64,000 nucleotides of DNA from Octopus sinensis (Eukaryota): positions 26,350,001 to 26,414,000 of the forward strand of contig NC_043014.1 in the NCBI RefSeq assembly GCF_006345805.1. The letters run 5' to 3'. A model generated the notes under the pieces. That model made no database searches. It was not told the DNA's origin and was given only the letters and a program-made list of their open reading frames with translations. This document shows positions 1,078 to 57,325 of this stretch, piece by piece (position 1 is the first letter of the stretch; every line of letters begins with the position of its first letter). A program made the translations under genes and the position numbers.

Positions 1078-1462
1078 TATATATATGTATATATATAAAT
1101 ATATATACATATATATATATACATAAATACATATATATACATATATACATATATATATATACATATATATTATACATATATATATACATATATATATACA
1201 TATATATATATATATACGTATATATATATAATACATATATATATACATATATATATACATATATACATATATATATATATACATATATATATATGCATAT
1301 ATATATATATATACATGTATATATATACACATATATACATATATATAAATATATATACATATATATACATATATATGTATATATATTTATACATATATAT
1401 ACATATATATGTATATATATATATATACATATATATATATGCATATATATACATATATATAC

Positions 1463-1519
<57 letters not shown>

Positions 1520-1548
1520 CACACATATATATATATATATATATTATA

Positions 1549-1582
<34 letters not shown>

Positions 1583-1635
1583 CTATATATATAATATATA
1601 TATATATATGTATATACACATATATATATGTGTAT

Positions 1636-1690
<55 letters not shown>

Positions 1691-1691
1691 T

Positions 1692-1735
<44 letters not shown>

Positions 1736-1747
1736 TATACATATATA
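968..1747. repeat. (TA)n / (TATACA)n microsatellite
   Basis: Direct reading; source of the IYIY ORF artefacts. Confidence 0.97.
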
Positions 1748-2000
1748 ACGGGAAGCTTTATGAAAATAGACAAAAGACGAAGGCAGGTGGGAAACAAACA
1801 AACAATTGTATTAGTATGGCGCTCAGGAAATATAAATAAAACAAGTCTTTAACGTTTCGAGCCTACGCTCTTCAACAGAAAGATACACAGAGAGAAAAAA
1901 ACACAGAAAGAAGGAGAGAAAAAAAATGCGTGCAGTAACTAACGAATCAACATGGCGATCTGATTTCGGCCAGAGGTCAAGATCAAACATGAGACGCGAG
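1748..2000 (-). mobile_element. Short PLE pseudo-LTR-like repeat carrying a variant minimal hammerhead
   Basis: Minus TCTTT-CTGTTGA-A-GAGC-gtag-GCTC-GAAAC-GTT-AAAGA at 1846-1883. Homologues at 2795-3065 and 40935-41115. Confidence 0.6.
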
Positions 2001-2049
2001 AGCGAAATAAGGGGAGATAATAGGGTTGATAATAGGGTTGAATGACCAG

Positions 2050-2395
2050 CTATTAGTGCGTAGGAAAGGTCTGGACGTGTGTATGTATAGGGTTGGTGTA
2101 TGTATTAGTATGTATTACTATGTATAAGGGTGTGTGTGTGTGTGTGTATGAGAGAGTATTAGTGCGTATGATAGGTCTGGACGTGCGTATGTATGGGGTT
2201 GGTGTATGTATTAGTATGTATTAGTATGTATTAGTACGTATTAGTATGTATAAGTGTGTGTGTGTGTGTATGAGAGAGTATAAGTGCGTATGAGAGGTCT
2301 GGACGTGTGTATGTATAGGGTTGGTGTATGTATTAGTATGTATTAGTATGTATTAGTACGTATTAGTATGTATTAGTTGGTGTATGTATTAGTAT
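2050..2395. repeat. Three ~110-120 nt tandem units with internal (TGTATTAGTA)n
   Basis: aggtctggacgtg(t/c)gtatgtat(a/g)gggttggtgtatgtattag is repeated three times. Confidence 0.85.
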
Positions 2396-2424
2396 GGCAC
2401 ATCATATATGATGTGATGTGTAAA

Positions 2425-2732
2425 GTCGTGTGGTGTAGTGTGGAGAGAGGAGAAGAGGGCGAGGGGAGAGGGGGGAAGAGGAGAAGAGGGGAGAGGGGGG
2501 AAGAGGAGAAGAGGAGGGGGGAGGGGGGGAGAGAGGAGGGGGAGGAAGGAGGAAAGAGGGAGAGGGGGAGAGAGAAGGGGAGTGAGGGAGCAGAGGGAAG
2601 GCGAAGAGGGAAGGAGGGAGGGAGAAAGAGGGAAGAAGGGAAGGGGAGTAGGGGTGAAAGGATGAAGGACTGAAGAAGTAGGGGTCGGGGGGAAAGGATA
2701 GGTGAGGAGGGGGGAGAGGAGGGGGGAGAGAG
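2425..2732. repeat. Polypurine (G/A-rich) low-complexity tract
   Basis: Almost exclusively G and A on the plus strand. Confidence 0.9.
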
Positions 2733-2738
2733 ATATAC

Positions 2739-2786
<48 letters not shown>

Positions 2787-2794
2787 ATATATAT

Positions 2795-3065
2795 AGTTTC
2801 AATTTACAAAAACAAAACAAAACAAAATACAAAGACTGGTGTGTAAACAACAAACAGATGCATTAGTTTAACGCTCGGGAAGTGAGAAAGTATTTTACGT
2901 TTCGAGCCTACGCTCTTCAACAGAAAGGGACACAGAAATAAACAGAGAGAAAATAAATAAAAAGGTTTAGTGGCCAGCGATCAATCATGGCAAAGGCCAG
3001 ACAGAGGTCGTCAGACAGGAGAGCTCGGAAGAAGGGGAGATAATAAAGCAGTGGTGATCCCAAAA
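2795..3065 (-). mobile_element. Second copy of the short pseudo-LTR-like hammerhead repeat
   Basis: acgtttcgagcctacgctcttcaacagaaag is identical to the 1852-1882 copy. Confidence 0.6.
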
Positions 3066-3196
3066 TGAAGGTGCGCGTGCGTGTGTATGTGAAATCATCT
3101 ATGTGCGTGTGGATAGGTGAATTTGACTCGTGCGCATGTGCATATGTAGGTGTATGTATGATGGTGTGCATGCTAGGAAGTAATCATATATATATA

Positions 3197-3247
<51 letters not shown>

Positions 3248-3277
3248 ATATATATACATGATATTATATATATATAA

Positions 3278-3552
3278 TGGAGGCGCAATGGCCCAGTGGT
3301 TAGGGCAGCGGACTCGCGGTCGCAGGATCGCGGTTTCGATTCCCAGACCGGGCGTTGTGAGTGTTTATTGAGCGAAAACACCTAAAAGCTTCACGACGCC
3401 CCGGCAGGGGGTGGTGATCTTTCACCACTCTTTCTTCTGTTGGCCTGCTCGCTTAGCCAGCGGGGTTGCGTCATTCGAAGGCTAAAACAATGCGAATGCA
3501 TTGTGACCAGCGATGTGTAACAACATCTGATGGTCTGGTCGGTCACGTGACG
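3278..3552 (+). mobile_element. tRNA-derived SINE, family B
   Basis: GGAGGCGCAATGGCCCAGTGGTTAGG...GGTTTCGATTCCC tRNA-like head with a non-tRNA body. Copies at 46077 and 50749. Confidence 0.8.
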
Positions 3553-3576
3553 TGATATATATATAATATATTGCAT

Positions 3577-3654
<78 letters not shown>

Positions 3655-4094
3655 ACCTATGTATAACTATAGTCCATGCATCCTACACATAAGAAATGTT
3701 TTTGTTTTTTGAGATTCATTCTGCATCTTTCTCTTGTAATTGTGAGACAGAAAATTATAAAATAAAAATTTGAATAAAATCAAAATGTTTATAAAATATT
3801 TTGCTTCGAATTATCTTTTTATGTATGCATATATACATCAATCCACCCATCGACGCTTTCATCTATCAATCTTTCTATCAATTCATCCATGAACTCATAT
3901 AAATGTGTGTGCATGCGTGTACGTTTAACATACAAATGTACAAATACACACGCATATGTTTCAGCATTTGTATATGTGTAACTGGGAATCGACTTGTGGT
4001 CAAATATGACCACCTCTTGGTTTTTACCATGGAAGCCATCATGGATTGAATGGGGGTAGACATATATACATGCCCGCATGCATACATACATATA

Positions 4095-4560
4095 TACATA
4101 TAAACATACAAATACAATGACTTTGAGCGCATTTTTCAGTATATCCATGATAAACAACAGAAAAATATTACAAGTTCTACTAAATCTAGAAGACATCACC
4201 ACTTCCTCACTAAATATGAACAACATTCAGTCAAGAACCCCAGAGTCGTTCCGAATGCCCTTCTACCACTGAGGATCTCCCCTGGCGGAAGCACATCCTT
4301 AGCATAGCTAAAACAGCATTCCAAAATTGGCGCTTCGATTGAGGGTCAAAAATTATTTCAATCCTCAACGGCTGACACTCTAAAGGGCTGCTCTCAATGT
4401 GGCACGGTGCTGCTGCTACGGATAAAGACATCTTGGAGCGCATCAAGGGAATGACCATGAAATTAAGTGGAATTTAATACCTAACCGACTTGGCTCGGCC
4501 TCTGGCCCACTGATATGCTGTGTTCTATCCATGTCTTTAATATCTAGTAACCATAGTCTT
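4095..4560 (+). mobile_element. Degenerate CR1/Jockey-type LINE, C-terminal RT region
   Basis: Frame pieces DLPWRKHILSIAKTAF..., WHGAAATDKDILERIKG..., LAH*YAVFY match the typical post-RT region; stops and frameshifts present. Confidence 0.65.
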
Positions 4561-5471
4561 TGTATATCTTCCAGACATATGAGACTGATACAGTGGATAC
4601 TCATCAAGATACAGAAATGTTCAAAGATAGTATATCTTTTAATGGTCCAGGAGTGTAGATTAGTGACATTCTAGCAAGATTGCTAGTTTCTATCTTAGCT
4701 AACTTCAATTATTAGTACCTATGATTTATAGACTTAATCAATAATATGTAAAATAACAGGCTATACCATGGTTACTTGCTATATTTTACATCCATACTGG
4801 GAAACAACTGCAATGTTCCAACAGTTGAATCACTGACAGTAAGAAAGAAATGGGAGTGTTTGTAATTTGGTACAGTAACAAATACCCTAAGGGACTTCGT
4901 TCAAGAACATCTTTTCGGTATTGTCACCGATGTTTGCCGTTAAACTTCAGCGAGAGAAACACATACATATACACAGAAACGTGCACTCATGTACAGGCAC
5001 ACACATATACACACACACACTGACACACGCACAGAGATAAACAAACATGCATGCACATACATACATACAGACAGACACATGTAAGTAAGTAGTTAGATAG
5101 ATAGATTTACAATTGGTGAAGTTATTAGAGTATCGGGCGAAATAACTTGCACTCTCCCCGTATCTTACGTTGGTGGTAATCATACTCTGTCATCGAGTTG
5201 AGCTCCATCACTTGGTTCTTGGGTATTTGGGTATCTTTGACAGAATCTAGCCTGTTGCAAGCATTTGGACCATTGAAAATACCTTCCTTCCCACTTTCCA
5301 CTAGTTTCGCAGGTCCTTCAAACCGTTATATGTGCTAACTATATCTCGTTACTTGGAAAGAAATTCATGTGCGCGTGTATGTATGTATATATATATATAT
5401 ACATACATAATACATACATAATACATACATACATAATACGTACATACATACATTCATACATACATACATGC

Positions 5472-6801
5472 ATAGTGATAAAGCATTCCACTGATGCCAT
5501 AAAGACACAAGTCTGGGTATTCCTACCGACGTACTGTAGTAAGCGAGTTGTTAGAGTGAGGGTGAGAAAAGTGCGACCGGAGTTGAATGAAACATGGCTG
5601 GTTGCCGCAGTCATGTACAATATGGAGAAGGATGCGAAAATCCTGAGAGTAACAAGAACGAAAAGAATGAAGTGGTGGGGACACGGAATCGATATTGCAG
5701 TACATGTAAGTGTGAGTAACATGAATAAAATTCCAGAAGAAATCATTCTACCCGAAGATATGAGATTGAGAGTGGTACTGGATGGAAGGCATCCCATATG
5801 CTACCTGTGTGGCGAGAAAGGCCACATGAAGTCGAGATGCCCCCAAAGAGAAGAGAAGAAACAACAGATGGAACAGTCTAAGGAGCAGGAGAGGGTGAAC
5901 GATGTGGTGCAGGAAGATGAGAAGGAGGCAACAGGAATAGAGGAGGAATTTGAAGTGGTCAAAAAACGAAAGGGGAAAGAAAGAATGGGCTCTCCGCTGG
6001 AGAGACAGAAAAAGATAAAAAGGAAGCAGATAAAGAGGTGGAGAAGGAAGTCGTAAAGGATGTTCGAAAGGAGGTCGAGAAAGAGGTACAAAAAGAGGTT
6101 GAGAAGGAGGTTATGGAGGAGGAGGGGGAGATAGAAGCAAGCATACGAAAGAATGTTTCAGGACAGCAACGAGAAGAAACAGCGATACTAACCAGGATCG
6201 AGGCGGTAGCGCCAAGATTGGAATATAGAAAACAAGCAAGAATGGCGAGAAAACATAGCTGGAATTTCGTGACATATGCTAAAAGCATAAATACCTAAAA
6301 AAAAAAAACCAAGCTTAAATCCGTTATAAGGGTTAAGTTGCCAAAGGAGATGTACGGTGAAAATGTAAAAGCTATTTTAATTGATAAAGAAAAATATAAC
6401 AAGTTGAAGGAAAAGTGTCAAATTTAACAACCGGGATTTGTGGTGGAGTTCGACAAATTACCGCCAGTAGTAAAATTAAGTGAACTAGAGCCGCACATAA
6501 GATATTAATAAAAAAAAGAGTAAAATTGTTTGCGAAAAAAGGAAAAAAGAGAGTAAACAAAATGATGCTAATTGTGAAAAACATATCTGGGAAAAAGAAA
6601 AAGATTATAAACTGAAAGTAAGAACGTTCAAATGGTACTATATGTGAGTGGGGTGCATGCAGCCATTTCATCACTATCGATTTCATTATTCGTTTTTTGT
6701 TCATTTTTCATTAGTTTTATACTTTTTGTCCCCACTGTGGTGTTCTGTCTGTCCTTGTTTTGTCTCTCTGTGTTCATGGCCTTGGTGCCAAATAAAGAAA
6801 A
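5472..6801 (+). mobile_element. ORF1-only (gag-like, CCHC) retroposon copy 1, 5'-truncated
   Basis: RVRVRKVRPE..WLVAAV..KWWGHG..CYLCGEKGHMKSRC (CX2CX4HX4C at 5799-5840). Ends in a tail with AATAAAGAAA. No APE or RT motifs between ORF1 and the tail. Confidence 0.75.
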
Positions 6802-6919
6802 GCAGTCAGCGAGATACGCTGTTCAGGCCAGTCACGCAGACGACGAAGTTACATCGTCATAATGTAGGACATATCAATGGCAACGAGGAATCGGAGCTCA
6901 CGCAGTGGGAAAATGTTTA

Positions 6920-9314: not shown

Positions 9315-9650
9315 TCACTGCGTGGTACCTTGGGAAAATGTCTTCTACTATAGCCTCGAGTTTAGTAGACGGAAACTGAAAGTAGCCCGTCGTATATATC
9401 TCTCTCCCTCTCTCTCTCTCTTTCTCTCTCTCTCTCTGTATATATATATGTATGTGTGTCTGTGTTTGTGACCCCAGCATCGCTTGACAACCGATGCTGG
9501 TGTGTTTACGTCCCCGTAACTTAGCTGTTCGGCAAAAGAAACCGACAGTATAAGTACTAGGCTTAGAAAGAATAAGTCCTGGGGTCGATTTGCTTGACTA
9601 AAGCATGGCCGCAGTCAAATGACTGAAACAACTACAAGAATAAAAGAATA
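9315..9650 (+). mobile_element. SINE family A, 5'-truncated
   Basis: cactgcgtggtaccttgg..gtagacggaaactgaaag..gacaaccgatgctggtgtgtttacg..gcatggccgcagtcaaatgactgaaac. Confidence 0.8.
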
Positions 9651-10364
9651 TCAATTTTATTTGTATCACAATGGAAAAGAAATGCAAAGTCAACGTGGTA
9701 CAAATAAGAATAAGCATAGAAGAAACCGGATCAACAAAACAACCCAAAAAATTAGATTGAGAAATGTAAAGAAAGAAGGGATGAAAAGTTTATTTATATT
9801 ATACTGCGATAATGTTTTTGTTAGAAGTAATACAAAATATAAACAAACTTTTCATCCCTTCTTTCTTTACATTTCTCAATCTAATTCTTTGTATGTTTAA
9901 CCTCTCATGATAAGTTACATTTGTCTTTATCCCATTTCCTCCCATAAACAATTATAAATATATTTTTCAAGTGCATTGTGATGTTTTAGCAACATTTTAA
10001 CGATCAATATTAGATATATTTCAACGATCAATATCTAATCACATGAACCCCACGTCCTAATAAGTTGTTGTTTACATTTGAGAACTACAAAATACAGTCC
10101 TCAAATTAGTTATTTCGTGATTCAAGACCAGAAAATATACTTACTTTTCCCTGAAGATACTCGATAATATATGGTTTTTCACATCTATAATCATTGTTTT
10201 GTTGATCAAGTTTTTTTATGCTTATTCTTATATGTATCACTTCTACTTTGCATTATTTTTCCATTGTGATACAAATAAAATGAACCAAGTATCTATTATA
10301 TTTTTTCTTCTCCATTTTCTTTTATTAACTTTATAATTTATTAAAACTCTGTCTCAGTTTTTCT

Positions 10365-14176: not shown

Positions 14177-16380
14177 GGGGGTGTATTTCTACGCAGGAAA
14201 AAATATAGGCAAATTTATTCTAGAAAATGCAGCTAAATCGAAAAAATTGTAATTGCTTAAAATATATTTATTTACATATATACCAAACTAGTTTCAACAA
14301 TAGTTTTTGTTTATAAATTTTGAAAATTTGGAATTATGAATTAGAAAAACTCCTTTAAAAGTTTCAATGTTGACAAATTAGAATGTTCATAACAGATAAA
14401 TTTAGAATTATGAATTAGAAAAACATGTTCAAAAATTTCGATGCTGATAAGTTTAAATGTTCATAACAGTGAATAATATTAAAACTGTTCATCATTTTGT
14501 TTGAATGTAAAAGCTCACTAGCGTTAGTAGTGATCAACAAGAAATGAATATCACCAAAGTTTCAGTCATACTGAGTTAAGAGAGGGAAAAAGAGGGAGAA
14601 ATGGAGATAGTAAAAAAAGGGATTTGGTTTACATTTTCTCTGATCCTCTTTCCGTCGTGCGTAGGAACTTTCGCTTGTAACGGCGTGTTTTGGAATTCGG
14701 TGTATTTATAAATTTTTTTCAGCGAGCGGATTTGAGTTTTGATTCGTTAAAGTACTGGTGACGTCTTGTTTTTCCGATGGTCAAGTTTGTGGCTCTACCT
14801 GGTTGGCTTCCCTATGGGGAACGGTCATCGATCGTTCCGGTTGGTTGATTATCATAAAGGGTCATTTTGTTGTATTTGCTGAAGTTCGATTTTGATTGGC
14901 CTAGAGTTAGGTGACGTCAGCAACTGGTGTTTGAAAAATTTCATTGGTCGAGAGATAGGTGACATCGGCAACTGGTGTTTGTATGGTGTTATTGCATGAT
15001 GATTTGGAGTTGCTGTTTCGAAACCCGGGTGGAAGAAGTTGCTAAATTTTTAAAAATTACTTGTTGTCCCTGGCTGCTTTTCGTTTTTCTCTTTAGTGTT
15101 CTTTCTTCTTTCTAAAGGATATTCAGCTGCGGTTCATATTTTTTAATGAGTTTTCTTACTTAAACGGAATTGGGCTGAAGTGTTTCCGGTGCATTGATAG
15201 AGAGAGATGATTTGGTATTTCGGGTTTATGTTTACGGGGCATGGGTCTAAGTGTTTGCTTACTGGAATTTTCCTAGTTGTGGGGTCCCGGATTTGTTGCC
15301 TGTGCACCGTTAGTCTGTCCCTCAAGTTTAAACTAGTTTGACCTATGTAGTCTCCGTCTTAACTCAGTATGACTGAAACGCTGATGATATTCATTTCTTG
15401 TCAATCACTACTAACACTAATAAGCTTCGTACTTTCAAACAAATTGATGCACAGTTTTAATATTATTCACTGTTATGAACATTTAACTTGTCAACATCAA
15501 AATTTTTGAACATGTTTTTCTAATTCATAATTCTAAATGTTTACCATTGATGAACAAAAATATTGTTGAAACTAGTTTGCTATATATGTAAATAAATTTA
15601 TTTTAAACAATTACAATTTTTCAAATTTAGGTGCATTTTCAACAACAATTTTGCCTATATTTTTCCTGCTTGGAAATAGACCCCCTTTTTTGTTATATAT
15701 CTACCATGCAAGGAACGAAAATGACATCCAAACACAGGATAACACGACACCCGATAAAATCCTATGTGAACTACAAGTCATCAATTCAAAGCTCACTCTC
15801 CTATCGGACAAACTCGATAAATCACATTGCAACTGCAAAGAAATGTGCCCAGAAAAAGGAAGATCTCTGCAGACAGAAATTAGTGAAACCGTCGAAAAAA
15901 TCTATAAATCATTCGAAACCTCAATGCATAAATCTGAAAATAACCCTAATCCTGGAACGGAAAAAATAACTTCATCTGTCAACCACCTTCCGATGTCAAG
16001 AAAGCTATACTGCAAGTATGAGACAAAATATTATAAATTCGCTTGCTGGAACATGATGAAGAACTCCAGTATACGAGAGATGGCTCAATTCAACTTCCTA
16101 TATTCTCCCCAGAAAGCTACAAATTAAAGCCATCCCCAACGAACCAGCAAAACAGAGAGAACATAAGGGGAAAAATGGTTCCACACAACCGGAAAAAAGT
16201 CACTACCGGAACAATACCAGAATGACCATCCAGGACCAAGAATAACCAATACCCTCTGCAGGGTTCCTAACACTTATCAAAGATACAAAATGGGAAATTC
16301 CATTGCACTCTTCACCACAAGACAAAACACCCCTACTCAAAGTTACAGAAACCCATCTCTCCAAGAACCCTCCACAACTC
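14177..16380 (+). mobile_element. Penelope-like element 5' portion with an inverted pseudo-LTR carrying a GIY-YIG C-terminal remnant
   Basis: Inverted arms 14177-14581 and 15357-15686. The spacer reads on minus YIGQTSLNLRDRLTVHRQQIRDP. A decayed PLE-like N-terminal ORF follows on plus from ~15700. Confidence 0.7.
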
Positions 16381-17199
16381 ATACTCATACTCATACTCAT
16401 ACGGTCTCTCGTATGAGTATGTTGTAGATATATATACATATATCTACAACATACACATACGTGCATTCATGTACACACTCATACGCACAACACATACTCA
16501 CAGAACACACAACTCATATACACACGCGCACACATACACATACATATACGTACATACGTATTAATCTATGCACACTCATACGATTATATATAACTACATA
16601 TATGTGCTTCAGTATCACGCATCTCAACATGTATGTGTGGATTTCTTCATGTAGATGAGAGAAAGGGGTGATTATAGATTCCACTCGGGTACTCCCGAGT
16701 GAAATCAGGGTGTCACCCCATTCGGATTTACGGTTGAGGGTGGGTTTGTATTCCTGTATAAAGACAGCTTCAGGTGTGAAAAAATATTTTCCCGGGCTAC
16801 ACACAAAAGAACTGAGAACTCTTGAATGATTAACAAATCAACTTCTAAGGACACACAGGAAATGAATCATTTACCATGAATTTTGACCGTGAAACCGTAA
16901 ATATTGAAATACTCGAATTCTGAGCTGGATATGCAGGTTCAAAACAATTTATTCGATTTCTAAAATGTCCGCACAAACCCAAAATAGTAACGATGTATGT
17001 ATGTCAAATAAATTACTACTTCATCAGTATTATGTTACACCATCAGTTAATGTGCTGTTATTCTTAGTACACAAAGTCACACACAAGATGCACATAATAT
17101 ATATATATATAGTAGTAGTAACAGAAAAGAAGGAATTTCGATACTCCCTACGTGGTGAGTTGTAATATATATAAGAAATTAATAAAGGAAAATACACAC

Positions 17200-20719: not shown

Positions 20720-21747
20720 TCTACCAAGCCACGCTCTTTTGTTGTTTTTTGAAGAAGTCTAAGCGAATTTTTGTGCGAAGCCACCATAGTTAGGTGGTGG
20801 TGAAACAATTGAAAAAATGAAAAGTTACGCAGAGGCTACTGGAGGTCGAGTTCCCCTGGACCCACGTGTGCTGAAGTCAGAGATGATGGAGTAGAATGAG
20901 AAGAAATTATGGCATGATAAAAAAAGAAGGATCAAATAATGGTCCTGCCAGAAGAGGAAAAAAAGAAAAATGGAAAAGAAGACGGTCATATTCAGAACAT
21001 TTTCGAATGTGAATAGAAGAATAGAACACGCACCGCAGGAAGAGATAGAGGAAATCTTGTAGGAACAAATAGAAGGGATAACTTTCTTTACAAGAGGAAG
21101 GAAATATGCGACTATAATAGTAATCTTTGTATCAGAAGAGGAGACGAAAAAAACCAATAGGCTGATACAAGGAGAGAAATGGACGTTAATGTCAAACTGC
21201 TTGGGCAAAAGAATCGTTAGGATTAGGGTGGGAAGAATCTCACCGTCGATAGACCCAGTATGGGTAATAGTCGCAATTTTTAATTCCGAGCTGGAGAAAG
21301 GAAGTGAAGACCTGAAGATTGGCATAATAAGCCGAACACTACACATGAAATGTTGGGGCTATGGTATAGAGATAATCTGTGCAATGAGCCCGAAATATTA
21401 CGACGAAATGGCGGAAACTGTGGAACTACCAAATGGAGAAAAGCAGGAAATAATGTTGAAGGGGAGACCCCCCTCCCCCCCACAAAGTGCTACGGATGTT
21501 GTGAAATAGGGCACTTGAGAAGGAAATGCCCTAGTGCGGCAGTGGAGATGGTAGAGGAGAGTGTTCAGGAAAATATAATGGAAAAAAAAGCAGAAACAGA
21601 AAACAGAACATGACGGGAATTTTATGGAAGTGAAACCCAGGGAAACAGAGAGAAGGAAGTCACCGGCGACAGTGGAATTGAAGAAATGTAAAGCAATGGA
21701 AGAGGAAACCCAACCCACGACGAGAAACGGAGAAAATTTTGCAACTG
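20720..21747 (+). mobile_element. ORF1-only retroposon copy 2, 5' part (host of copy 3)
   Basis: YAEATG..FFTRGRKYATI..RIRVGRISP..WVIVAIF..KCYGCCEIGHLRRKC (CCHC 21488-21529); homologous to copy 3 along its length. Confidence 0.8.
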
Positions 21748-23633
21748 ATTTATTTATTACCCACAAGGGGCTAAACATAGATGGGATAATACACACATGC
21801 GGGGACACTCAACATATGAAAGAATGGAATAGTGACATTATACAATAAAGATGAAACGGCGACCCTGGCCCCGCTGCAGGGTGGTTGCGTTATTTCAGTT
21901 ATTTCAACACTTCTTTTCAAAATTACTTCAACATTTTTCAAAAGTTCTTTTCACAATTATCTCCACAGTCTTTTCAAAATTATTTCAACATCAAAAGTTC
22001 TTTTCAAAATTATCTTAACAGTTCTTTATAACATAAAACTCTACTTACCATTTTATATTGTTCTTAATTTCCTCATAGGTCACCACTGGAGCGTTGAGTT
22101 GGAAATTCACCTCGGACCCCAGTGGGTTTATATCTGATGGGAAAGCCTCTTTTAACTTCCTATACTTATCTTTTTCCATTAAAATCCATCTCGTCTCCTT
22201 ATCGTAAACCTCCGAGAGGTCCACTTTAACAATGTCTTTCATTTTAGTTATTTTCCTTTCTATTTTTTGTGTCGACCGATATGTTATCAAATATATTCTG
22301 TTCCGGTGTATCTCTTCCATCTGTATGTCTGTTCCTTTTTGGTTTTGTGACTCTGTACTATCATGTGTCTGTTCTTGTATATTTATTTGTAGCTGTATGT
22401 CTGTCCTTTTATTTGTCTGCGGGTTTGCATGTTTGTGCGACTGTAAGTCTGCATATTGTGTCTGTGTATCTGTGCTTTTTGGTTTCTGGAAAAAAAGGAA
22501 AAACAAGTAACGCTTCCGTATGTATGTATGTCAGTGAGTTTATGCGTCTGTGAATCTGTCTGTTTGTACCATTGTGAGTCTGTATGCTCACTTGGTGATG
22601 TTCTGCTTTTATCTTCTTTTCTCGGTGATCCTTCTTGATCCTGTGATTTATATGTCTTTCTTTGTTCAAATTTCGGCGATGAGCTCCTCCATTCTCTCTT
22701 CCTTGACTTAGCTTCCTCAAAATCGGCGCTCTGTGCCTGTTTCTTCTCCTCTATCACGCCTGCTTGCGTTTCCATTTCTATGTTTTTCATAATTTCTGAG
22801 CACCTTCTTCTAATGTGACTTCTTTTGCCACATTCATAGCACTTTGGAGGTTCCTTTCCAACATTATATCCAGCTTGTTCTAATTTGTCAGTTCCAGTGT
22901 CTCCGGTATGGTATCGCATTCTGTCTGCTTTGACGAGAAACCCACCTCCAAACCAAACCCCCATCAATTTATTTGTTGGGTTCTAGTTATCATAACTACC
23001 TCTACTTCTTTTTTTCCTGAAAAATTGCTGCCATTACCCATTCCGGTTCCATTTTCGGCGGGATCCTACCCACCCTAATCCTCGTTGAACGTCTACCTAT
23101 CTGATTGGGAAAGAACATCCAATTTCCTCCAGTTAACGTCTTATTTGCGTATTTCCTTGCTGGCTCTTCCGATTCAAATGTGACCTCTACAGACGCGTAT
23201 GTCTTGCCTCTTGTGAAAAACGACACATCTTTCAATTCCTTCAAAGACTCCTCCACATCTTCCTTCGTTGTGCTCTCTATTCTTTTATTTTTCCTTGAAA
23301 ACAATTTATATTCCACCACCGTAATTTCCATTTTGGCCTTTTCCTCCTCTGATGGGGTCAACTTTACGTTTGGCCCCTCTTTCTGTACCATCTCTAGATA
23401 TTTTCCAAATTTTTTAGCCATGTCTTCATTCCAGTGTATTTCGTATTGCTTCAGCAGGACTGGGACCACGGAAGCCCGACTCCCCGTCGCTGTCGCATAT
23501 GTCTTCCCTTTCTCCATCTCAGTAATGCTCACCAAACAATGGTGGGGTTATACTCAAAAACTGCTGCAAAGCACACAAAACGATTAAAAAAAAAAAAAAT
23601 ACAAGCGAAGCAAAAACACGCCCGACAAGTAAG
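21748..23633 (-). mobile_element. ORF1-only retroposon copy 3, full length (1.9 kb), flanked by an 11-bp TSD
   Basis: 5'UTR, then MVSITEMEKGKTYATATG..FFTRGKTYASVEVTF..RIRVGRIPP..KCYECGKRSHIRRRC. 3' tail ATGTTTAGCCCCTTGTGGGTAATAAATAAAT. TSD TTTTGCA(A/G)CTG at 21737-21747 and 23634-23644. No RT. Confidence 0.85.
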
Positions 23634-23644
23634 TTTTGCAGCTG

Positions 23645-23945
23645 TTGAATGAATAGGTTTTCAAAAGTGAAAAACATTTGGTTGAACGTTTGGGTTTAAA
23701 AAAAGGAAAAGAAAATAAGTAAATCCTGTATGAACATTTGTTAAAAAAGTTTATATTTGTAAGTTAAAAGCGAAAAGGGAAGTCGCCTCAGAGCGAGGAT
23801 AGAAATTGTTATGTAACATGTAAAGGTTTAAAGGAAAAGAAATCCGCGGATTCATCATTTCACATTCATCCTTTCATGTGTTTTTTCCCCCGCATGTCTT
23901 TGTATGTCCTCTTTGTAATTAGGCCTTTTGCCTATAATAAAAAAT
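23645..23945 (+). mobile_element. ORF1-only retroposon copy 2, 3' part and tail
   Basis: Ends ccccgcatgtctttgtatgtcc..gcctataataaaaaa, similar to the tails of copies 1 and 3. Confidence 0.6.
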
Positions 23946-23951
23946 CAAGCT

Positions 23952-24022
23952 AGCAAGCCAAGCTACTCCAGACTGATGAAGAGCAATGACTCTGAAACTT
24001 GTCTCTGAGTGCTGGCTTTGCT
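23952..24022 (+). ncRNA. Minimal type I hammerhead ribozyme with an intact core
   Basis: CAGA-CUGAUGA-AGAG-caauga-CUCU-GAAAC-uu-GUC^UCUG. Stem I extends (actc/gagt, gcca.gc/gctggc). Predicted cleavage after 24003. Confidence 0.78.
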
Positions 24023-24229: not shown

Positions 24230-24600
24230 TGGTGGATATATAATTTCTGTATTTGTGAATTAAGGCGACCATTAGTTTCATGTTAGGAAGAGTAGAAAAA
24301 TATCCGATCATATGGAGAAAGGCGTTTACCTACATTTTGGAAAATAGCCTCTTTTCGTTCACGGGTTTCTCATAAATTCGCTTAAATGAAACAGTGAATC
24401 AAGGGAGGATACTCTAGAAAGCATTTTTTGAAGTTTGTCTCCCTTCATTTGTCGTTTCGGTAAACTTCATAATTTTTTTGCATTATATGTTAGCTTTTTT
24501 CTCGATCAGTGTTTTTGTATTTGCATGTTGAGGTTGCACGTCATTGGAAATTATTTCTCTTTCTTTGCGTGGAGTTTGTGATTTATTTCTTTTATTATAG
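24230..24600 (+). mobile_element. PLE pseudo-LTR-like fragment
   Basis: Reverse-complement similarity to 26770-27190 and direct similarity to 25975-26120. Confidence 0.55.
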
Positions 24601-38004: not shown

Positions 38005-39013
38005 CTGCATAAATGAAAGGAATTAGTTAAAATGTTACAGCAAGTTATAGGCGTCGGCATGGCTCTGTTTTTAAGAAGCTGCTTTGCTATCGTTATTATA
38101 TGTACCAGACTTGAAAGAATACTAGGGTCGATTCGTTCGATTAAAATTCGTTCAAAATTGTGCCCCAGTATGGCCGTAGTCAAACGACTGAATCAAGTAA
38201 GTGATAAAAGACAAAAGGATTATTTGATCAATATTGTAATTATGGGTTCAATAACGAAAACTTAAATTGAATGTCAAAAATTTTGATGTTTCCATTTTCA
38301 AAAATGACCACATCCATATTGCTGTCATTAGTTGATCCCACGTCAGCTCTGTTGTACCGACATGTAATGAGAATTGTTTCAGCCGAGTCCATAACGACTT
38401 CTCCTTGATACAAGATATACAATGTTATGTGAGTATTTGATTTGGCACAGATTTGGCTTCTACCGACAGTAGAGGTGGTACTAACTAGTCACTCGTTTGC
38501 TTATCTTATATTCAACATATGATTAATGTAAAGAGGAACACAGGTAAAATAAAATACTAATACGATGAAAACAATTACCAGCAACATTTCGGAAGAACTA
38601 CATCCATGAGATTATACTTCTCTTCGTGGATAAGCATTCATTATGTTCTGATTCGTTATTGACTCATTCTAACAAAACGAGAAACACTGCTGCTTCCTAA
38701 TTCTCAGATTGTCTATCTAGCGATTCATATTACGTGATCAAAACAATGGACATACTCTCATAACATTCAAAGGATATTGACGATGTGGCTATCACATGCT
38801 GCACGCTTTCATGTGTTATGAACAAATGCTTGAATATGAAGAAATCATCTTAACAAAAATATAATTGGATCAATAGCCAAATAGTCAATAGTAAATTATG
38901 AGGCTTTGCAAAAGCCGTATTGTAAGCATTATACATACGACGTGGGCAAAAACAAGGCTATAAACATTTCCCATCAAAAGTTAACGAAAATCTTTTAACG
39001 ATTTGTTACTTAC

Positions 39014-40669: not shown

Positions 40670-40891
40670 GTTTGTGTGTCTTTGAGTCAGCATTTCTTCC
40701 CACCATCACCTCTTGATAACCGGTGTTGGTGTGCTTATGTCCCCGTAACTTAGTGGTTTGACCAAATAGACCAGTAGAATAAGTACTAGGTCCCAAAAAA
40801 GTCCTGGGGTAAATTTGTTTAACTAAAACACTTCAAGGCAGTACTCCAGCACGGCAGCAGTCAAGTCCTAGTAAGAAGTAAAAGTATAAAA

Positions 40892-40895
<4 letters not shown>
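40670..40895 (+). mobile_element. SINE family A tail, diverged, intronic
   Basis: gataaccggtgttggtgtgcttatgtccccgtaacttag..gtactccagcacggc. Confidence 0.7.
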
Positions 40896-40928
<33 letters not shown>

Positions 40929-41187: not shown

Positions 41188-41450
41188 GAGAAGAATACAG
41201 TGTGCATTCAAGCACATAACAGATACCCTAAAAATAGGATATCTAACTCACTAGAAAGAGCAGTTAAACTCCAAGCCACTAATTGTTGTAATTCCGAAAG
41301 TGATTGAAAAATAAATAAGGTAAAAGTTTTTCAGTCACTTTCGGAATTACAACAATTAGTGGCTTTGAGTCTAACTGCTCTTTCTAGTCAATCAGATATC
41401 CTATTTTTCGGGTATCTCTTATGTGTTTGAATGTACACTGTATTCTTCTC
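41188..41450. repeat. Intronic fold-back hairpin (~123-nt arms, ~15-nt loop)
   Basis: 41188-41311 and 41327-41450 are reverse complements with scattered mismatches. Confidence 0.9.
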
Positions 41451-47379: not shown

Positions 47380-47960
47380 TCGTCGCATTGACCATGAAAG
47401 AGAAAGTTGAATGGAGTATCTGCATCAGATTTTGTCAAAAGCTTGACCATACCTGCTCAGAGGCCAACGCAAAGTTTTCAAAAATGTTTCATCGTTCTCG
47501 ACACAATCAAAGAGTTCTTGTGTAACTAAAACGCGAGTGTCTATTTGGTCATCTGAAAGCAGTTTTGGCGTCTCATACCCAAATCTTCAGTGATTATAGA
47601 CTGAAGTGAACCGTAACTAATCTTTACACCTTTTGATAACTCACGGATGGTGATTCGACAATTTCTCCTCACCGATGCATGCATATTTGCAATGTTTATC
47701 TCAGTTCTGCTGGTTGCGAGTCTCCCAGAACATTCGTCAATATCGACATTTTTCGGTTATCTTGGAAACGTCTGTACCACTCGTACGGCTCATGTGCTCC
47801 TCTCCATACACTTTCTGCAACTTTGCGTAGGCCTCTGAGCACGTGTCACCGTGACAACGGTTTCTCCCATGGTCAATACGACGATTACACGCTATATAAC
47901 TTTCTTCCAAGCAGTGTTGTAAACAGCAGAAGTAAGTCAGAACGTTAAATCATAATGCGC
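47380..47960 (+). mobile_element. Mariner-like remnant
   Basis: MKEKVEWSICIRFCQKL resembles a mariner N-terminus (EQRxCIKFCxKL). Confidence 0.55.
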
Positions 47961-51994: not shown

Positions 51995-52700
51995 GCGCGT
52001 GATCGTCGCATTGACCATGAAGAGAAAGTTGAATGGAGTATCTGCATCAGATTTTGTCAAAGCTTGACCATACCTGCTCAGAGGCCAACGCAAAGTTTTC
52101 AAAAATGTTTCATCGTTCTCGACACAATCAAAGAGTTCTTGTATAACTGAAACCCGAGTGACTATTTGGTCATCTGAAAGCAGTTTTGGCGTCTCATACC
52201 CAAATCTTCAGTGATTATAGACTGAAGTGAACCGTAACTAATCTTTACACCTTTTGATAACTCACGGATGGTGATTCGACAATTTCTCCTCACCGATGCA
52301 TGCATATCTGCGATGTTTATCTCAGTTCTGCTGGTTGCGAGTCTCCCAGAACATTCGTCAATATCGACATTTTTCGGTCAACTTGGAAACGTCTGTACCA
52401 CTCGTACTGTTCGTACGGCTCATATTCTCCTCTCCATACAGTTTCTGCTACTTTGTGTAGGCCCCTGAGCAGGTGTCGCCATGACAACTGTCTCTCTCAT
52501 GGTCAATACGACGATTACACGCTACACAATTTCCTTCCAAGCAGTGCTGTAAACAGCGGAAGTGAGTGAGAACGTTAGATCATAATGCGCATGTACAGAA
52601 ATTTTTTCACAGTCAGTCTGTGCCAAACAGCTTTATTGCGCATGCTTTAGCTTCGTTACTAAGCAACAGTCTGGATATTTATTGATCAGACCTCATACAA
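51995..52700 (+). mobile_element. Mariner-like remnant, duplicated copy retaining a right-end-like sequence
   Basis: Same N-terminal motif; ends ggatatttattgatcagacctcata. Confidence 0.55.
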
Positions 52701-54864: not shown

Positions 54865-54942
<78 letters not shown>

Positions 54943-54943
<1 letters not shown>

Positions 54944-56283
54944 TATAGACCACATTTCTGGCTTTACAGTTTGTTTGTGGGCTAAATCTACATACAGTGC
55001 AATAGTTATCCGTACAGAGAGTTCTACTAAAAGATAGGTTCTACCAATTATAGATCTGATAGGGTTGCCTGGCTTTTCAGCAAATAGCTAACTCCATCCA
55101 CCAGAGTATTAAGGTCACAATAGACTACCCCACTAAACACCCCAACCATAGACTACCAGTACTAGACACTGAACTCTGGCTAGAAATTGTGAAAAATAAA
55201 ACCCAAATCCTTCATTCATACTATACAAAACCTATGGCCTCAAAATACCTGATCCACCGGAACTCAGCCATTGCGGGCAATGCCAAATTCAATATTTTGA
55301 TGGCAGACCTCGTCAGAATAATGAGAAATGTGTCACGCATGTGCGAGCCTACAGAATTAAAGAGACACGTACAGTATTTCATTCACCGCATGCAGTTCTC
55401 AGGTTACAGCCATAAAGAAAGGATCAGAGTATACAAAGGAGCCATGAAGAAATTTGATAATATATTATGTAATGATAGGAATGGGATTTGCCCACTCTAT
55501 AGGAACAAGTCATGGAACACTATAGAAAGGACAAAAAAGAAAATAGGGAAGGCCAACTCTTGGTATGATAGCCATAAATACCAGAGTGTCATGTTCGTTG
55601 ACACCACCCAGGGAGGTGAACTGGCGTACCGCTTTAGAAGGACCCTAGATAAACTTAAACTAAGAATTAAGGTTGTTGAAAAGCCTGGCAACCCTATCAG
55701 ATCTATAATTGGTAGAACCTATCCTTTTAGTAGAACTCTCTGTACGGATAACTATTGCACTGTATGTAGATTTAGCCCACAAACAAACTGTAAAGCCAGA
55801 AATGTGGTCTATAGTATAAGATGTATAGAGGGACGATGCAGTAACAAGACAGTAACATACGTAGGGGAAACAGCAAGAAGCATTGGAGAGCGGGTGAATG
55901 AACATTGGAGACAACTCAAGGAAGGTAAAAGCTCATCGATTCTGTACCAACACGCCGAACAAGAACACGGGGGATCAATCAATAACATAGAGATTAAGAT
56001 ATTGTCCACACATAGAACAGATGCAACAATTAGACAAATTACAGAAGCTACACATATAATAGAAAATAAACCTAGCCTGAATAGAAAACTAGAATGGGAC
56101 AATAGCACACACCACAACATATGACGATAGTGGATCCTGCAAACATAATAAATACACATATAATTAAAGAAATAGAAATGAATAACTATATATATGTATG
56201 TGTGTATATGTGTGTATATGTGTGTGTGTATATGTGTATATATATGTGTATATATGTATATGTATATATGTATATATGTGTAT

Positions 56284-56977: not shown

Positions 56978-56980
<3 letters not shown>

Positions 56981-57325
56981 TCTTTTACTCTTTTACTCGT
57001 TTCGGTCATTTGACTGCGGCCATGCTGGAGCACCACCTTTAGTCGAGCAAATCGATCCCGAGACTTATTCTTTGTAAGCCCAGTACTTATTCTATCGGTC
57101 TGTTTTGCCGAACCGCAAAGTGACGGGGACGTAAACACACCAGCATCGGTTGTCAAGCAATGCTAGGGGGGACAAACACAGACACACAAACACATACACA
57201 CACATATATATATACATATATACGACAGGTTTCTTTCAGTTTCCGTCTACCAAATCCACTCACAAGGCATTGGTCGGCCCGGGGCTATGTGGTTGGTTAG
57301 CAAGCTACTTACCACACAGCCACAT
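56978..57325 (-). mobile_element. SINE family A with an internal deletion in the head
   Basis: Tail, core and head on minus; ~60 nt missing between ggggcta and tgtggttgg. Confidence 0.8.

What the first reader, a model, noticed from the sequence alone, without database searches (positions are those of the whole stretch)
23952..24022. Hammerhead ribozyme with a fully canonical core directly behind a retroposon A-rich tail
Seen: every core base is present (CUGAUGA, GAAA, GUC), with stem II AGAG/CUCU, a 2-bp stem III, and a long interrupted stem I. Established: minimal type I hammerheads with vestigial stem III are typical of Penelope-like elements and generally cleave as dimers. It is the only motif in the window without core lesions. 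It is co-oriented with, and under 10 nt downstream of, the tail of ORF1-only copy 2, so read-through RNA could be 3'-processed here (speculative). No PLE ORF is adjacent.
Basis: partly seen in the sequence, partly recalled or inferred. Interest (0 to 1): 0.7.

Follow-up and report, generated by a model that had tools for sequence, protein, structure and literature searches.

The report
Solo hammerhead ribozyme motif, probably genuine

Summary
A permissive descriptor expects 0.0023 chance hits per window. The outer helix I adds p of about 0.001-0.003. Rfam reports no hammerhead, but that is weak evidence: a textbook phage hammerhead scores only 30.2 bits against a cut-off of 34. A covariance model built only from four experimentally validated retrozyme hammerheads ranks the candidate first in the window (22.6 bits, E about 3e-4), within the range of real phage hammerheads (18-33 bits). 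Two decayed hammerheads lie 1.7 kb away (25674-25724 +, 25440-25490 -) as the arms of an inverted repeat, each with one different core lesion.

Against present activity: A10.1-U11.1 instead of G-C, a non-palindromic 2-nt loop 3, no second copy of the same sequence, and a competing fold 3.7 kcal/mol more stable.

The context claim fails. The nearest ORF1-like copy is on the opposite strand with its 5' end facing the motif, about 420-435 nt away.

Verdict: probably a genuine solo type-I hammerhead (about 0.7), a new member of a known kind.

The parts
23952..23972 (+). HH-A helix I, 5' strand (AGCAAGCCAAGCTACTCCAGA)
   Evidence: Pairs with 24004-24022. There are 4 proximal bp (CAGA/UCUG), then 14 more Watson-Crick pairs interrupted by 4 single-base bulges. 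The outer part is unusual, p = 0.0008-0.003.
23973..23979 (+). HH-A core C3-A9 (CUGAUGA)
23980..23993 (+). HH-A helix II AGAG/CUCU (A10.1-U11.1) with 6-nt loop 2 CAAUGA
   Evidence: It has the 4-bp helix and 6-nt loop size of the RF00163 consensus, whose loop also starts CAA.
23994..23997 (+). HH-A core G12 A13 A14 A15.1 (GAAA)
23998..24001 (+). HH-A vestigial helix III: C15.2, loop UU, G16.2
   Evidence: A 2-nt hairpin loop is not formable. Closing only A15.1-U16.1 costs +5.8 kcal/mol, and the self-duplex of this segment is only -1.1 kcal/mol.
24002..24003 (+). HH-A U16.1 and C17; predicted cleavage between 24003 and 24004
   Evidence: and the hammerhead numbering convention.
24004..24022 (+). 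HH-A helix I, 3' strand (TCTGAGTGCTGGCTTTGCT)
25674..25724 (+). HH-B: second type-I hammerhead with one core lesion (CUGACAA, G8 to A). Helix I 6-8 bp, helix II GCGUU/AACGU, loop AAUGUA, helix III AUCAC/GUGAU, U17
   Evidence: The minimum-energy fold of 25650-25748 is a textbook hammerhead with an interrupted helix I of about 19 bp, z = -3.45. No null hit as good was found in 1200 simulated windows.
25440..25490 (-). HH-B': inverted-repeat partner of HH-B with a different core lesion (CGGACGA, U4 to G) and helix II 3' strand AACAC
   Evidence: The arms 25628-25756(+) and 25536-25407(-) are 81.5% identical. The differences from HH-B at G8, 11.1 and 11.2 are CpG-type transitions, so a CUGACGA core with a GCGUU/AACGC helix II is the simplest ancestor (inference).
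22045..23535 (-). Context only: frameshifted ORF1-like (CCHC knuckle) retroposon remnant on the opposite strand. Not part of the ribozyme.
   Evidence: Three ORF pieces lie in different frames on the minus strand. They are homologous to 20808-21800(+) and 5367-6505(+).

Best explanation
HH-A (23952-24022, + strand) is a genuine hammerhead-lineage sequence. It is an isolated type-I hammerhead of the animal kind: helix I open, 4-bp helix II with a 6-nt loop, and a vestigial helix III. It was most likely left by, or is still part of, a hammerhead-bearing mobile repeat.

If transcribed on the + strand it would fold into the three-way junction and cut itself between C24003 and U24004 by the usual in-line transesterification. 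The products would carry a 2',3'-cyclic phosphate on the upstream RNA and a 5'-OH on the downstream RNA (established hammerhead chemistry; inferred here, not shown).

Several features argue for weak or no activity on its own:
- Helix III is only A-U plus C-G around a UU loop.
- The 10.1-11.1 pair is A-U.
- A register-shifted fold that buries C3 and C17 is more stable.

I therefore expect a dormant or relic copy rather than a working processing signal. It has no functional tie to the neighbouring ORF1-like retroposon.
For: (1) The core and the three core-adjacent pairs are complete.

(2) Chance expectation is 0.0023 per window for a permissive descriptor. The outer helix I has a further p of 0.0008-0.003.

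(3) Covariance model R1 was built only from coral, mussel and two axolotl retrozyme hammerheads that were shown to self-cleave (sequences from PMC7229834 Suppl. Table 2).
- R1 ranks HH-A first of 128 kb searched, at 22.6 bits and E = 3.4e-4. The best decoy scores 15.5 bits.
- The same model scores bona fide phage hammerheads at 18-33 bits and non-hammerhead decoys at 13-14 bits.

(4) Hammerhead-bearing repeats demonstrably exist in this stretch.
- HH-B and HH-B' lie 1.7 kb away, each with a single, different core lesion.
- Their helices are excellent and HH-B folds as a textbook hammerhead.
- At one core mismatch or fewer, 0.037 sites per window are expected and 2 are seen.

(5) The architecture matches published animal type-I hammerheads.
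- Helix II of 4 bp and helix III of 1-2 bp with a 2-4 nt loop (PMC4209133).
- Axolotl Ax330 has GAAAC-AU-GUC against GAAAC-UU-GUC here, and loop 2 CAAAAA against CAAUGA here.
- The RF00163 consensus loop also starts CAA.

(6) A related background fact: 235 Hammerhead_1 hits were reported in a cephalopod genome (PMC6962438). The window's organism is not established.
Against: - No Rfam hammerhead family reaches even E <= 10.
- A10.1-U11.1 replaces the highly conserved G-C (PMC4209133, PMC3088659). A-U is what chance hits in AT-rich sequence typically show: 24 of 72 chance hits had A-U and 1 of 72 had G-C.
- Loop 3 (UU) is not palindromic.
- Helix III fails the published RNAMotif type-I descriptor, which needs at least 3 bp and a loop of at least 3 nt.
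- It is single copy in 64 kb, so no covariation test is possible.
- Flank similarity to HH-B is not significant.
- The hammerhead-compatible ensemble is only 0.25% of the predicted ensemble.
- The hairpin is equally stable on the minus strand, so there is no strand-specific signal.
- No related sequence was found in the viral or metagenome collections. Two contigs share the inner pattern but lack helix I.
Confidence: 0.7

Rival explanations
1. Chance look-alike: a fortuitous hairpin whose 31-nt interior happens to spell the hammerhead consensus. It has no ribozyme ancestry or activity.
For: - The motif is simple, and consensus matches are expected by chance in large databases (PMC3088659).
- At 1.8e-8 per nt, a genome of gigabase size would hold tens of chance hits to the permissive descriptor.
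- A-U at 10.1-11.1, a non-palindromic loop 3 and a 2-bp helix III are all chance-like features.
- There is no Rfam hit.
- It is single copy.
- The metagenome scan shows that the inner pattern can occur without helix I.
Against: - The joint probability of the inner motif and the outer helix I is about 2e-6 to 7e-6 per window.
- The independent model gives E = 3.4e-4, and the score equals that of real hammerheads.
- Two further hammerhead relics lie within 1.8 kb.
- The loop and helix sizes match the canonical animal architecture.
Confidence: 0.2
2. One reading: the hammerhead trims the 3' end of read-through transcripts of the adjacent ORF1-only retroposon.
For: Ribozymes do process retroelement co-transcripts in other systems, such as R2, L1Tc and the Schistosoma SINE-like elements (PMC6765202). 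A short A/T-rich stretch (23934-23945) precedes the motif.
Against: - The adjacent ORF1-like copy is on the minus strand, and its 5' end faces the motif about 420-435 nt away.
- That copy is frameshifted.
- The other ORF1-like copies (5367-6505 and 20808-21800) have no hammerhead after them.
- The 'tail' is not a defined element end, because 23600-23950 has no other copy in the window.
Confidence: 0.03
3. Another kind of structured RNA or DNA hairpin, such as a C/D-box snoRNA-like unit (UGAUGA ... CUGA), a miRNA-like precursor or a small foldback, with the hammerhead core being incidental.
For: The only Rfam matches over the site are C/D-box snoRNA models. The 71-nt hairpin folds with z = -3.0 on the + strand and z = -2.4 on the - strand.
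Against: - The snoRNA scores are at most 12.8 bits against cut-offs of 36-54, with E > 0.6.
- Only 25 nt separate the putative C and D boxes, and the flanks next to the boxes do not pair as a terminal stem.
- A 31-nt branched 'loop' is atypical for a miRNA precursor.
- Neither idea explains GAAA, U16.1, H17 and helix II all being in register.
Confidence: 0.03

Closest known systems
Canonical animal type-I hammerheads of non-LTR retrozymes and satellite DNAs (amphibian, Schistosoma, coral, mussel; Rfam RF00163)
   Same: Type-I topology, intact core and A2.1-U1.1. Helix II is 4 bp with a 6-nt loop starting CAA. Helix III is reduced to A-U and C-G around a 2-nt loop, as in axolotl Ax330 (GAAAC-AU-GUC). 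Helix I continues outward as an imperfect rod. It scores 22.6 bits on a model built from four such ribozymes.
   Different: A10.1-U11.1 instead of G-C, and helix II sequence AGAG/CUCU instead of GUCC/GGAC, so there is no RF00163 hit. Loop 3 (UU) is not palindromic. It is not in a 150-450 bp tandem array and is a single copy in 64 kb. Helix I has a bulge after 4 bp rather than 6 clean pairs. The loop-loop contact nucleotides could not be verified.
Minimal hammerheads of Penelope-like elements (Cervera and de la Pena 2014, PMC4209133)
   Same: Weak or absent helix III, short proximal helix I (4-5 bp), and frequent occurrence as single dispersed motifs. Pairs on opposite strands 100-700 bp apart are described, which resembles the HH-B/HH-B' arrangement.
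   Different: Helix II is 4 bp, not 6-8 bp. There is no unpaired base between A9 and 10.1 and no G10.1-C11.1. The motif is not in a terminal repeat next to an RT/GIY-YIG ORF; the nearest GIY-YIG-like ORF is 31 kb away and is itself only a sub-threshold Pfam match.
Isolated intronic hammerheads of amniotes (HH9, HH10)
   Same: A solitary type-I motif that is not in a tandem repeat.
   Different: Those are defined by deep cross-species conservation and have a stable helix III. Conservation cannot be tested here.

Membership tests
Hammerhead ribozyme (general consensus, Perreault et al. 2011 filters) | Core C3 U4 G5 A6 N7 G8 A9 G12 A13 A14 A15.1 U16.1 H17 without mutation | tested here: met
   criteria quoted from PMC3088659.
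Hammerhead ribozyme (general consensus, Perreault et al. 2011 filters) | [quoted passage not shown] | tested here: met
   A2.1-U1.1, A10.1-U11.1 and A15.1-U16.1 are all Watson-Crick.
Hammerhead ribozyme (general consensus, Perreault et al. 2011 filters) | Published RNAMotif type-I descriptor: helix III of at least 3 bp with a loop of at least 3 nt | tested here: not met
   Helix III is 2 bp with a 2-nt loop; descriptor text read. The same paper notes that weak helices III are common in repeat-type hammerheads.
Hammerhead ribozyme (general consensus) | Site-specific Mg2+-dependent self-cleavage 3' of H17 | not testable with these tools
   Needs in vitro transcription and a cleavage assay.
Rfam RF00163 Hammerhead_1 | Score at or above the gathering cut-off (34 bits) | tested here: not met
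   No hit at the gathering cut-off or at E <= 10. As a control, a textbook phage type-I hammerhead reaches only 30.2 bits, and five phage loci with hammerheads give no gathering-level hit. The test is therefore insensitive to helix II variants.
Animal retrozyme / satellite type-I hammerhead | Significant match to a covariance model of validated members | tested here: met
   Model R1 from 4 validated sequences: 22.6 bits, E = 3.4e-4, top of the window. Real phage hammerheads score 18-33 bits.
Animal retrozyme / satellite type-I hammerhead | Helix II of 4 bp, and helix III of 1-2 bp capped by a 2-4 nt palindromic loop | tested here: inconclusive
   The sizes are met. Loop UU is not palindromic, and the dimer helix III would carry two U-U mismatches (duplex -1.1 kcal/mol). 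Definition from PMC4209133.
Animal retrozyme / satellite type-I hammerhead | Highly conserved G10.1-C11.1 | tested here: not met
   A-U here. A natural exception exists: axolotl Ax353 has U10.1 and U11.1 (PMC7229834).
Animal retrozyme / satellite type-I hammerhead | Occurrence in tandem repeats of about 150-450 bp | tested here: not met
   No second copy of the sequence in 64 kb.
Animal retrozyme / satellite type-I hammerhead | Conserved loop 1-loop 2 tertiary contact nucleotides | tested here: inconclusive
   Loop 2 has the right length and starts CAA like the RF00163 consensus. The helix I bulges differ, and no structure-level test is available.
Penelope-like-element minimal hammerhead | Located in the terminal repeats flanking an RT/GIY-YIG ORF | tested here: not met
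   The only related coding remnants are at 55069-56106, 54942-55031 and 16709-16795.
Penelope-like-element minimal hammerhead | Long helix II (6-8 bp) with an unpaired base between A9 and 10.1 | tested here: not met
   Helix II is 4 bp with no extra base. A scan with a minimal-hammerhead descriptor found nothing else in the window. Definition from PMC4209133.
Any hammerhead family | Covariation in helices among homologous copies | not testable with these tools
   No homologous copy is available. The source genome is absent from the searchable collections.

The most novel reading that the evidence does not exclude
HH-A and HH-B may represent an undescribed compact form of hammerhead-bearing repeat: a 70-90 nt 'hammerhead hairpin'. 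In it a type-I core is closed by an interrupted helix I of about 20 bp. It would spread as solo or foldback (inverted-pair) units independent of PLE coding sequence and of tandem retrozyme arrays. Alternatively, HH-A may be a conserved single-copy cellular ribozyme that tolerates A10.1-U11.1.
Probability: 0.12. Interest if true: 0.55.

Novelty: new member of a known kind. Interest (0 to 1): 0.3.

Why it matters
Hammerheads are already known by the thousands in invertebrate and lower-vertebrate genomes, tied to retrozymes and PLEs, so one more copy changes little.

The modest value lies in three points:
- It shows that Rfam's type-I model misses credible animal-type hammerheads whose helix II is not GUCC/GGAC.
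- It gives a natural A10.1-U11.1, UU-loop variant whose activity could be measured.
- The nearby inverted pair of decayed hammerheads hints at a foldback-type carrier that a genome-wide survey could define.

It does not support a new link between hammerheads and ORF1-only retroposons.

Tried and rejected
- **Rfam, gathering and E-value modes, three region sizes.** No hammerhead was reported, only microsatellite-driven miRNA noise and weak C/D snoRNA matches. I first read this as strong evidence against. I downgraded it after the phage positive control.
- **Paralogues in the window.** blastn with word size 7 and a 3-mismatch pattern search found none. The 2-mismatch site at 15547 has no helix I.
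- **PLE-type minimal-hammerhead descriptor, including the U3-A8 variant.** Nothing was found.
- **Public collections.** The viral scan gave 0 hits. The metagenome scan gave two homologous contigs from one sample, with the same inner pattern but no helix I, which fits the roughly one chance match I estimated by hand (not computed).
- **Protein route to the source genome or orthologous loci.**
  - The ORF1-like protein has no homologue in the 5.8-billion-protein set.
  - The GIY-YIG-like ORF has unnamed homologues of at most 48% identity.
  - One such locus (L003) has no hammerhead.
  - Those homologues show no RT domain in Pfam, so calling the ORF a PLE remains unproven.
- **Homology between HH-A and HH-B flanks.** Shared short blocks (TGGCTTT, GGTGCTTA) looked suggestive but are not significant by shuffling: p = 0.3 for the downstream flank and 0.02 for the whole region, out of structural register.
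- **snoRNA, miRNA and tRNA-SINE readings.** Rejected.
- **A retrozyme-like pair formed by HH-A and HH-B (1715 nt apart, same strand).** Rejected, because the two are not copies of one repeat.

Full report
**What is in the sequence.**
The stretch 23952-24022 reads AGCAAGCCAAGCUACUCCAGA CUGAUGA AGAG CAAUGA CUCU GAAA C UU G U C UCUGAGUGCUGGCUUUGCU. In hammerhead numbering this gives:
- C3-A9 at 23973-23979.
- Helix II at 23980-23983 and 23990-23993, with A10.1-U11.1.
- Loop 2 at 23984-23989.
- G12-A15.1 at 23994-23997.
- C15.2 at 23998, loop 3 (UU) at 23999-24000, G16.2 at 24001, U16.1 at 24002 and C17 at 24003.

Helix I starts A2.1-U1.1 and has four contiguous pairs (CAGA/UCUG). It then continues with 14 more Watson-Crick pairs interrupted by four single-base bulges. 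This is the only zero-mismatch core in the window.

**Is it more than chance?**
- The bare core pattern is not significant: 1.3 matches are expected per window.
- I simulated 4 Gb of first-order Markov sequence with the window's dinucleotide statistics. I required helix I of at least 4 bp, helix II of at least 4 bp with a 3-20 nt loop, and at least one pair beyond A15.1-U16.1 with a 2-20 nt loop. This gave 72 hits, or 1.8e-8 per nt and 0.0023 per window.
- A second simulation of 1200 windows gave 0.0025 per window.
- Holding the inner 39 nt fixed and randomising the outer flanks, an outer helix I as stable as the real one appears in 0.075% (Markov flanks), 0.1% (unlinked real flanks) and 0.28% (linked real flanks) of trials.
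- The joint expectation is therefore a few per million windows.
- Chance hits mostly have A-U, U-A or G-U at 10.1-11.1; G-C occurred in only 1 of 72. The A-U seen here is thus a chance-like trait.

**Rfam and why its silence is weak.**
No hammerhead family is reported at the gathering thresholds. None is reported at E <= 10 on 181 nt or on 53 nt. Only C/D snoRNA models match there, at 12.8 bits or less.

As a control I pulled phage contigs containing CUGAUGAGUCC...GGACGAAAC. By eye these are textbook type-I hammerheads. Even so, five such loci gave no gathering-level hit. The best-looking one (L010 2806-2856) scores only 30.2 bits on RF00163, whose cut-off is 34.

That alignment shows the model is 45 positions long. 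Its consensus is aUccagCUGAcGAGUCCCAA[3]GGACGAAACG[2]CGUCcuggAu, so it is dominated by the GUCC/GGAC helix II. A hammerhead with AGAG/CUCU should lose most of its score. The Rfam result says 'helix II is not the canonical sequence' and little more.

**An independent model.**
I took the four retrozyme hammerheads whose self-cleavage sites are given in Supplementary Table 2 of PMC7229834: coral Amil224, mussel Mg353, and axolotl Ax353 and Ax330. I aligned them and built covariance model R1 without the candidate.

| Target searched with R1 (filters off) | Score |
|---|---|
| HH-A, 23965-24010(+), top of the window | 22.6 bits, E = 3.4e-4 |
| 34227, a partial local match | 15.5 bits |
| 25674-25724(+) | 12.3 bits |
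| Phage hammerheads | 18-33 bits |
| Non-hammerhead decoys, including the two metagenome contigs | 13-14 bits |

The E-values are rough because the calibration is short. The ranking and the 7-bit gap to the best decoy are not affected by that.

**Two more hammerheads 1.7 kb away.**
The R1 hit at 25674-25724 reads GAGCCA CUGACAA GCGUU AAUGUA AACGU GAAA UCAC UG GUGA U U UGGCUU. Its features are:
- One core lesion (G8 to A).
- Helix I of 6-8 bp, helix II of 5 bp and a 6-nt loop 2.
- Helix III of 5 bp including A15.1-U16.1.

The minimum-energy fold of 25650-25748 is a textbook hammerhead with an interrupted helix I of about 19 bp (z = -3.45).

This motif is the right arm of an inverted repeat, 25628-25756(+) against 25536-25407(-), at 81.5% identity. 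The left arm (25440-25490, minus strand) reads GAGCCA CGGACGA GCGUU AAUGUA AACAC GAAA UCAC UC UUGA U C UUGCUA. It therefore carries a different core lesion (U4 to G) and has G8 intact.

The differences at G8 (CG against CA) and in the helix II 3' strand (AACGU against AACAC) are CpG-type transitions. The simplest common ancestor has the core CUGACGA and a perfect GCGUU/AACGC helix with G10.1-C11.1. This ancestor is an inference from two copies.

A descriptor scan allowing up to two core mismatches finds only HH-A and HH-B in the window. The null expects 0.037 sites per window at one mismatch or fewer. None of 1200 simulated windows contained a site as good as HH-B.

Hammerhead-bearing repeats therefore exist in this genome and in this very stretch. 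This sharply raises the prior that HH-A is real. HH-A and HH-B share architecture (type I, long interrupted helix I, 6-nt loop 2 containing AAUG). Their sequence similarity is not significant, so I do not call them one family.

**Features that argue against present-day activity.**
Keeping only A15.1-U16.1 costs +5.8 kcal/mol.
- Published animal type-I hammerheads with this design are thought to work as dimers through a palindromic helix III and loop 3 (PMC4209133, PMC3088659, PMC6765202).
- Here ACUUGU pairs with itself with two U-U mismatches (-1.1 kcal/mol). No second copy exists within -24 kb or +40 kb.
- The predicted minimum-energy fold (-25.3 kcal/mol) uses a register shifted by two (AGAC/GUCU) that pairs C3 with G16.2 and buries C17. 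The best hammerhead-compatible fold is -21.6 kcal/mol and makes up 0.25% of the ensemble. Nearest-neighbour models ignore tertiary contacts, so this is a caution and not a disproof.
- A10.1-U11.1 departs from what Perreault et al. call the most conserved pair after 15.1-16.1. However, a 60,000-copy axolotl family has U-U there (PMC7229834).
- All stems are Watson-Crick, so the minus strand folds equally well. Nothing marks the + strand as the RNA strand except the core itself.

**Context.**
The window is AT-rich (34% G+C). It is full of microsatellites and SINE-like repeats and has no tRNA genes. From memory the SINE resembles octopus repeats; this is unverified.

Three diverged ORF1-like (CCHC-knuckle) retroposon remnants are present:

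| Coordinates | Strand |
|---|---|
| 5367-6505 | + |
| 20808-21800 | + |
| 23535 down to 22045 | - |

The last two are convergent. The copy next to HH-A is on the minus strand and is broken into three frames. Its start (TTG at 23535, or ATG at 23517) faces the motif from 417-435 nt away.

The 'tail' is ATAATAAAAAAT (23934-23945). A longer A14 run lies at 23586-23599. The interval 23600-23950 has no other copy in the window, so no element end can be defined there.

The only GIY-YIG-like ORF (55189-56124) is 31 kb away. Its Pfam match is below threshold at 20.2 against 22.6 bits. Its homologues show no RT domain.

HH-A lies 214 nt outside a roughly 3-kb nested inverted-repeat structure, 24236-24592 against 27190-26800. 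The HH-B/HH-B' foldback sits inside that structure, slightly left of its midpoint.

**Mechanism and rivals.**
- Most likely (about 0.7): HH-A is a genuine solo type-I hammerhead of the animal retrozyme/PLE world. If transcribed it would cut between C24003 and U24004. As it stands it is probably slow or inactive.
- Pure chance remains possible (about 0.2). The evidence is statistical and there is no covariation.
- snoRNA-like or miRNA-like readings do not explain the in-register core (about 0.03).

**Comparison and novelty.**
HH-A works like, and most resembles, the canonical animal type-I hammerheads. It fails several membership criteria of the narrowly defined families: the RF00163 cut-off, G10.1-C11.1, a palindromic loop 3, tandem arrangement, and the PLE minimal-hammerhead layout. 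I therefore file it as a new, somewhat deviant member of a known kind. Interest is modest.

Noticed in passing
window 25407-25756 (arms 25407-25536 minus strand, 25628-25756 plus strand): A foldback whose two arms each carry a decayed type-I hammerhead: HH-B' at 25440-25490(-) and HH-B at 25674-25724(+). Each has a different single core lesion. CpG-type differences point to an ancestor with a perfect core and G10.1-C11.1. Weak similarity extends to 25334 and 25844.
   Followed up: yes
window 24236-24592 vs 27190-26800; 24474-24598 vs 25980-26106; 25893-25980 vs 26006-25919: Nested inverted and direct repeats (73-78% identity) make a roughly 3-kb palindrome-like structure around the hammerhead foldback. 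HH-A lies 214 nt outside its left edge.
   Followed up: partly
window 5367-6505(+), 20808-21800(+), 22045-23535(-): Three diverged (about 30-36% amino-acid identity) ORF1-like genes with a CX2CX4HX4C knuckle. The latter two are convergent and frameshifted. The 177-aa N-terminal piece has no homologue in the 5.8-billion-protein set.
   Followed up: partly
window 55189-56124(+), 54942-55078(-), 16709-16795(-): A 311-aa ORF with a sub-threshold GIY-YIG match and a motif pattern that recalls PLE endonucleases. A short inverted partial duplicate lies just upstream and a small fragment at 16.7 kb. Homologues (48% identity or less) are unnamed proteins on megabase-scale ENA contigs plus one coral protein, and none shows an RT domain in Pfam.
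   Followed up: partly
window 9449-9651, 27408-27583, 36313-36527, 38153-38216, 40678-40897, 56980-57198 (inverted): A SINE-like dispersed repeat family of about 200 nt with 63-92% identity between copies. From memory it resembles octopus SINEs, which is my only hint to the organism.
   Followed up: no
window 27714-27945 and 28491-28722: A 232-nt inverted repeat, 99% complementary, with 545 nt between the arms. It looks like a young foldback or MITE-like insertion.
   Followed up: no
window 47438-47737 and 52059-52358: Direct repeats of 300 nt at 98% identity, 4.6 kb apart. Further duplicated and inverted segments are nearby (for example 49963/53172 and 50195/52935). This may be an LTR pair or a recent segmental duplication.
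   Followed up: no
window 41257-41381: A long, near-perfect hairpin scoring 68 bits on a plant miRNA model (cut-off 100). It is probably a MITE-type inverted repeat.
   Followed up: no
L063 (IMG/VR contig, 1336-6896) and L010 (2403-3881): These phage contigs carry arrays of same-strand type-I hammerheads, at least 8 in L063 and 4 in L010. Spacing is a few hundred bases to about 1.3 kb. None reaches the Rfam gathering score.
   Followed up: partly
L001 1703-1734(-) and L002 185-216(+): Two homologous metagenome contigs from one sample share CUGAUGA-AGAG-CCAUAG-CUCU-GAAAC-N3-GUC but have no helix I. This shows that the inner pattern alone occurs without a hammerhead.
   Followed up: yes
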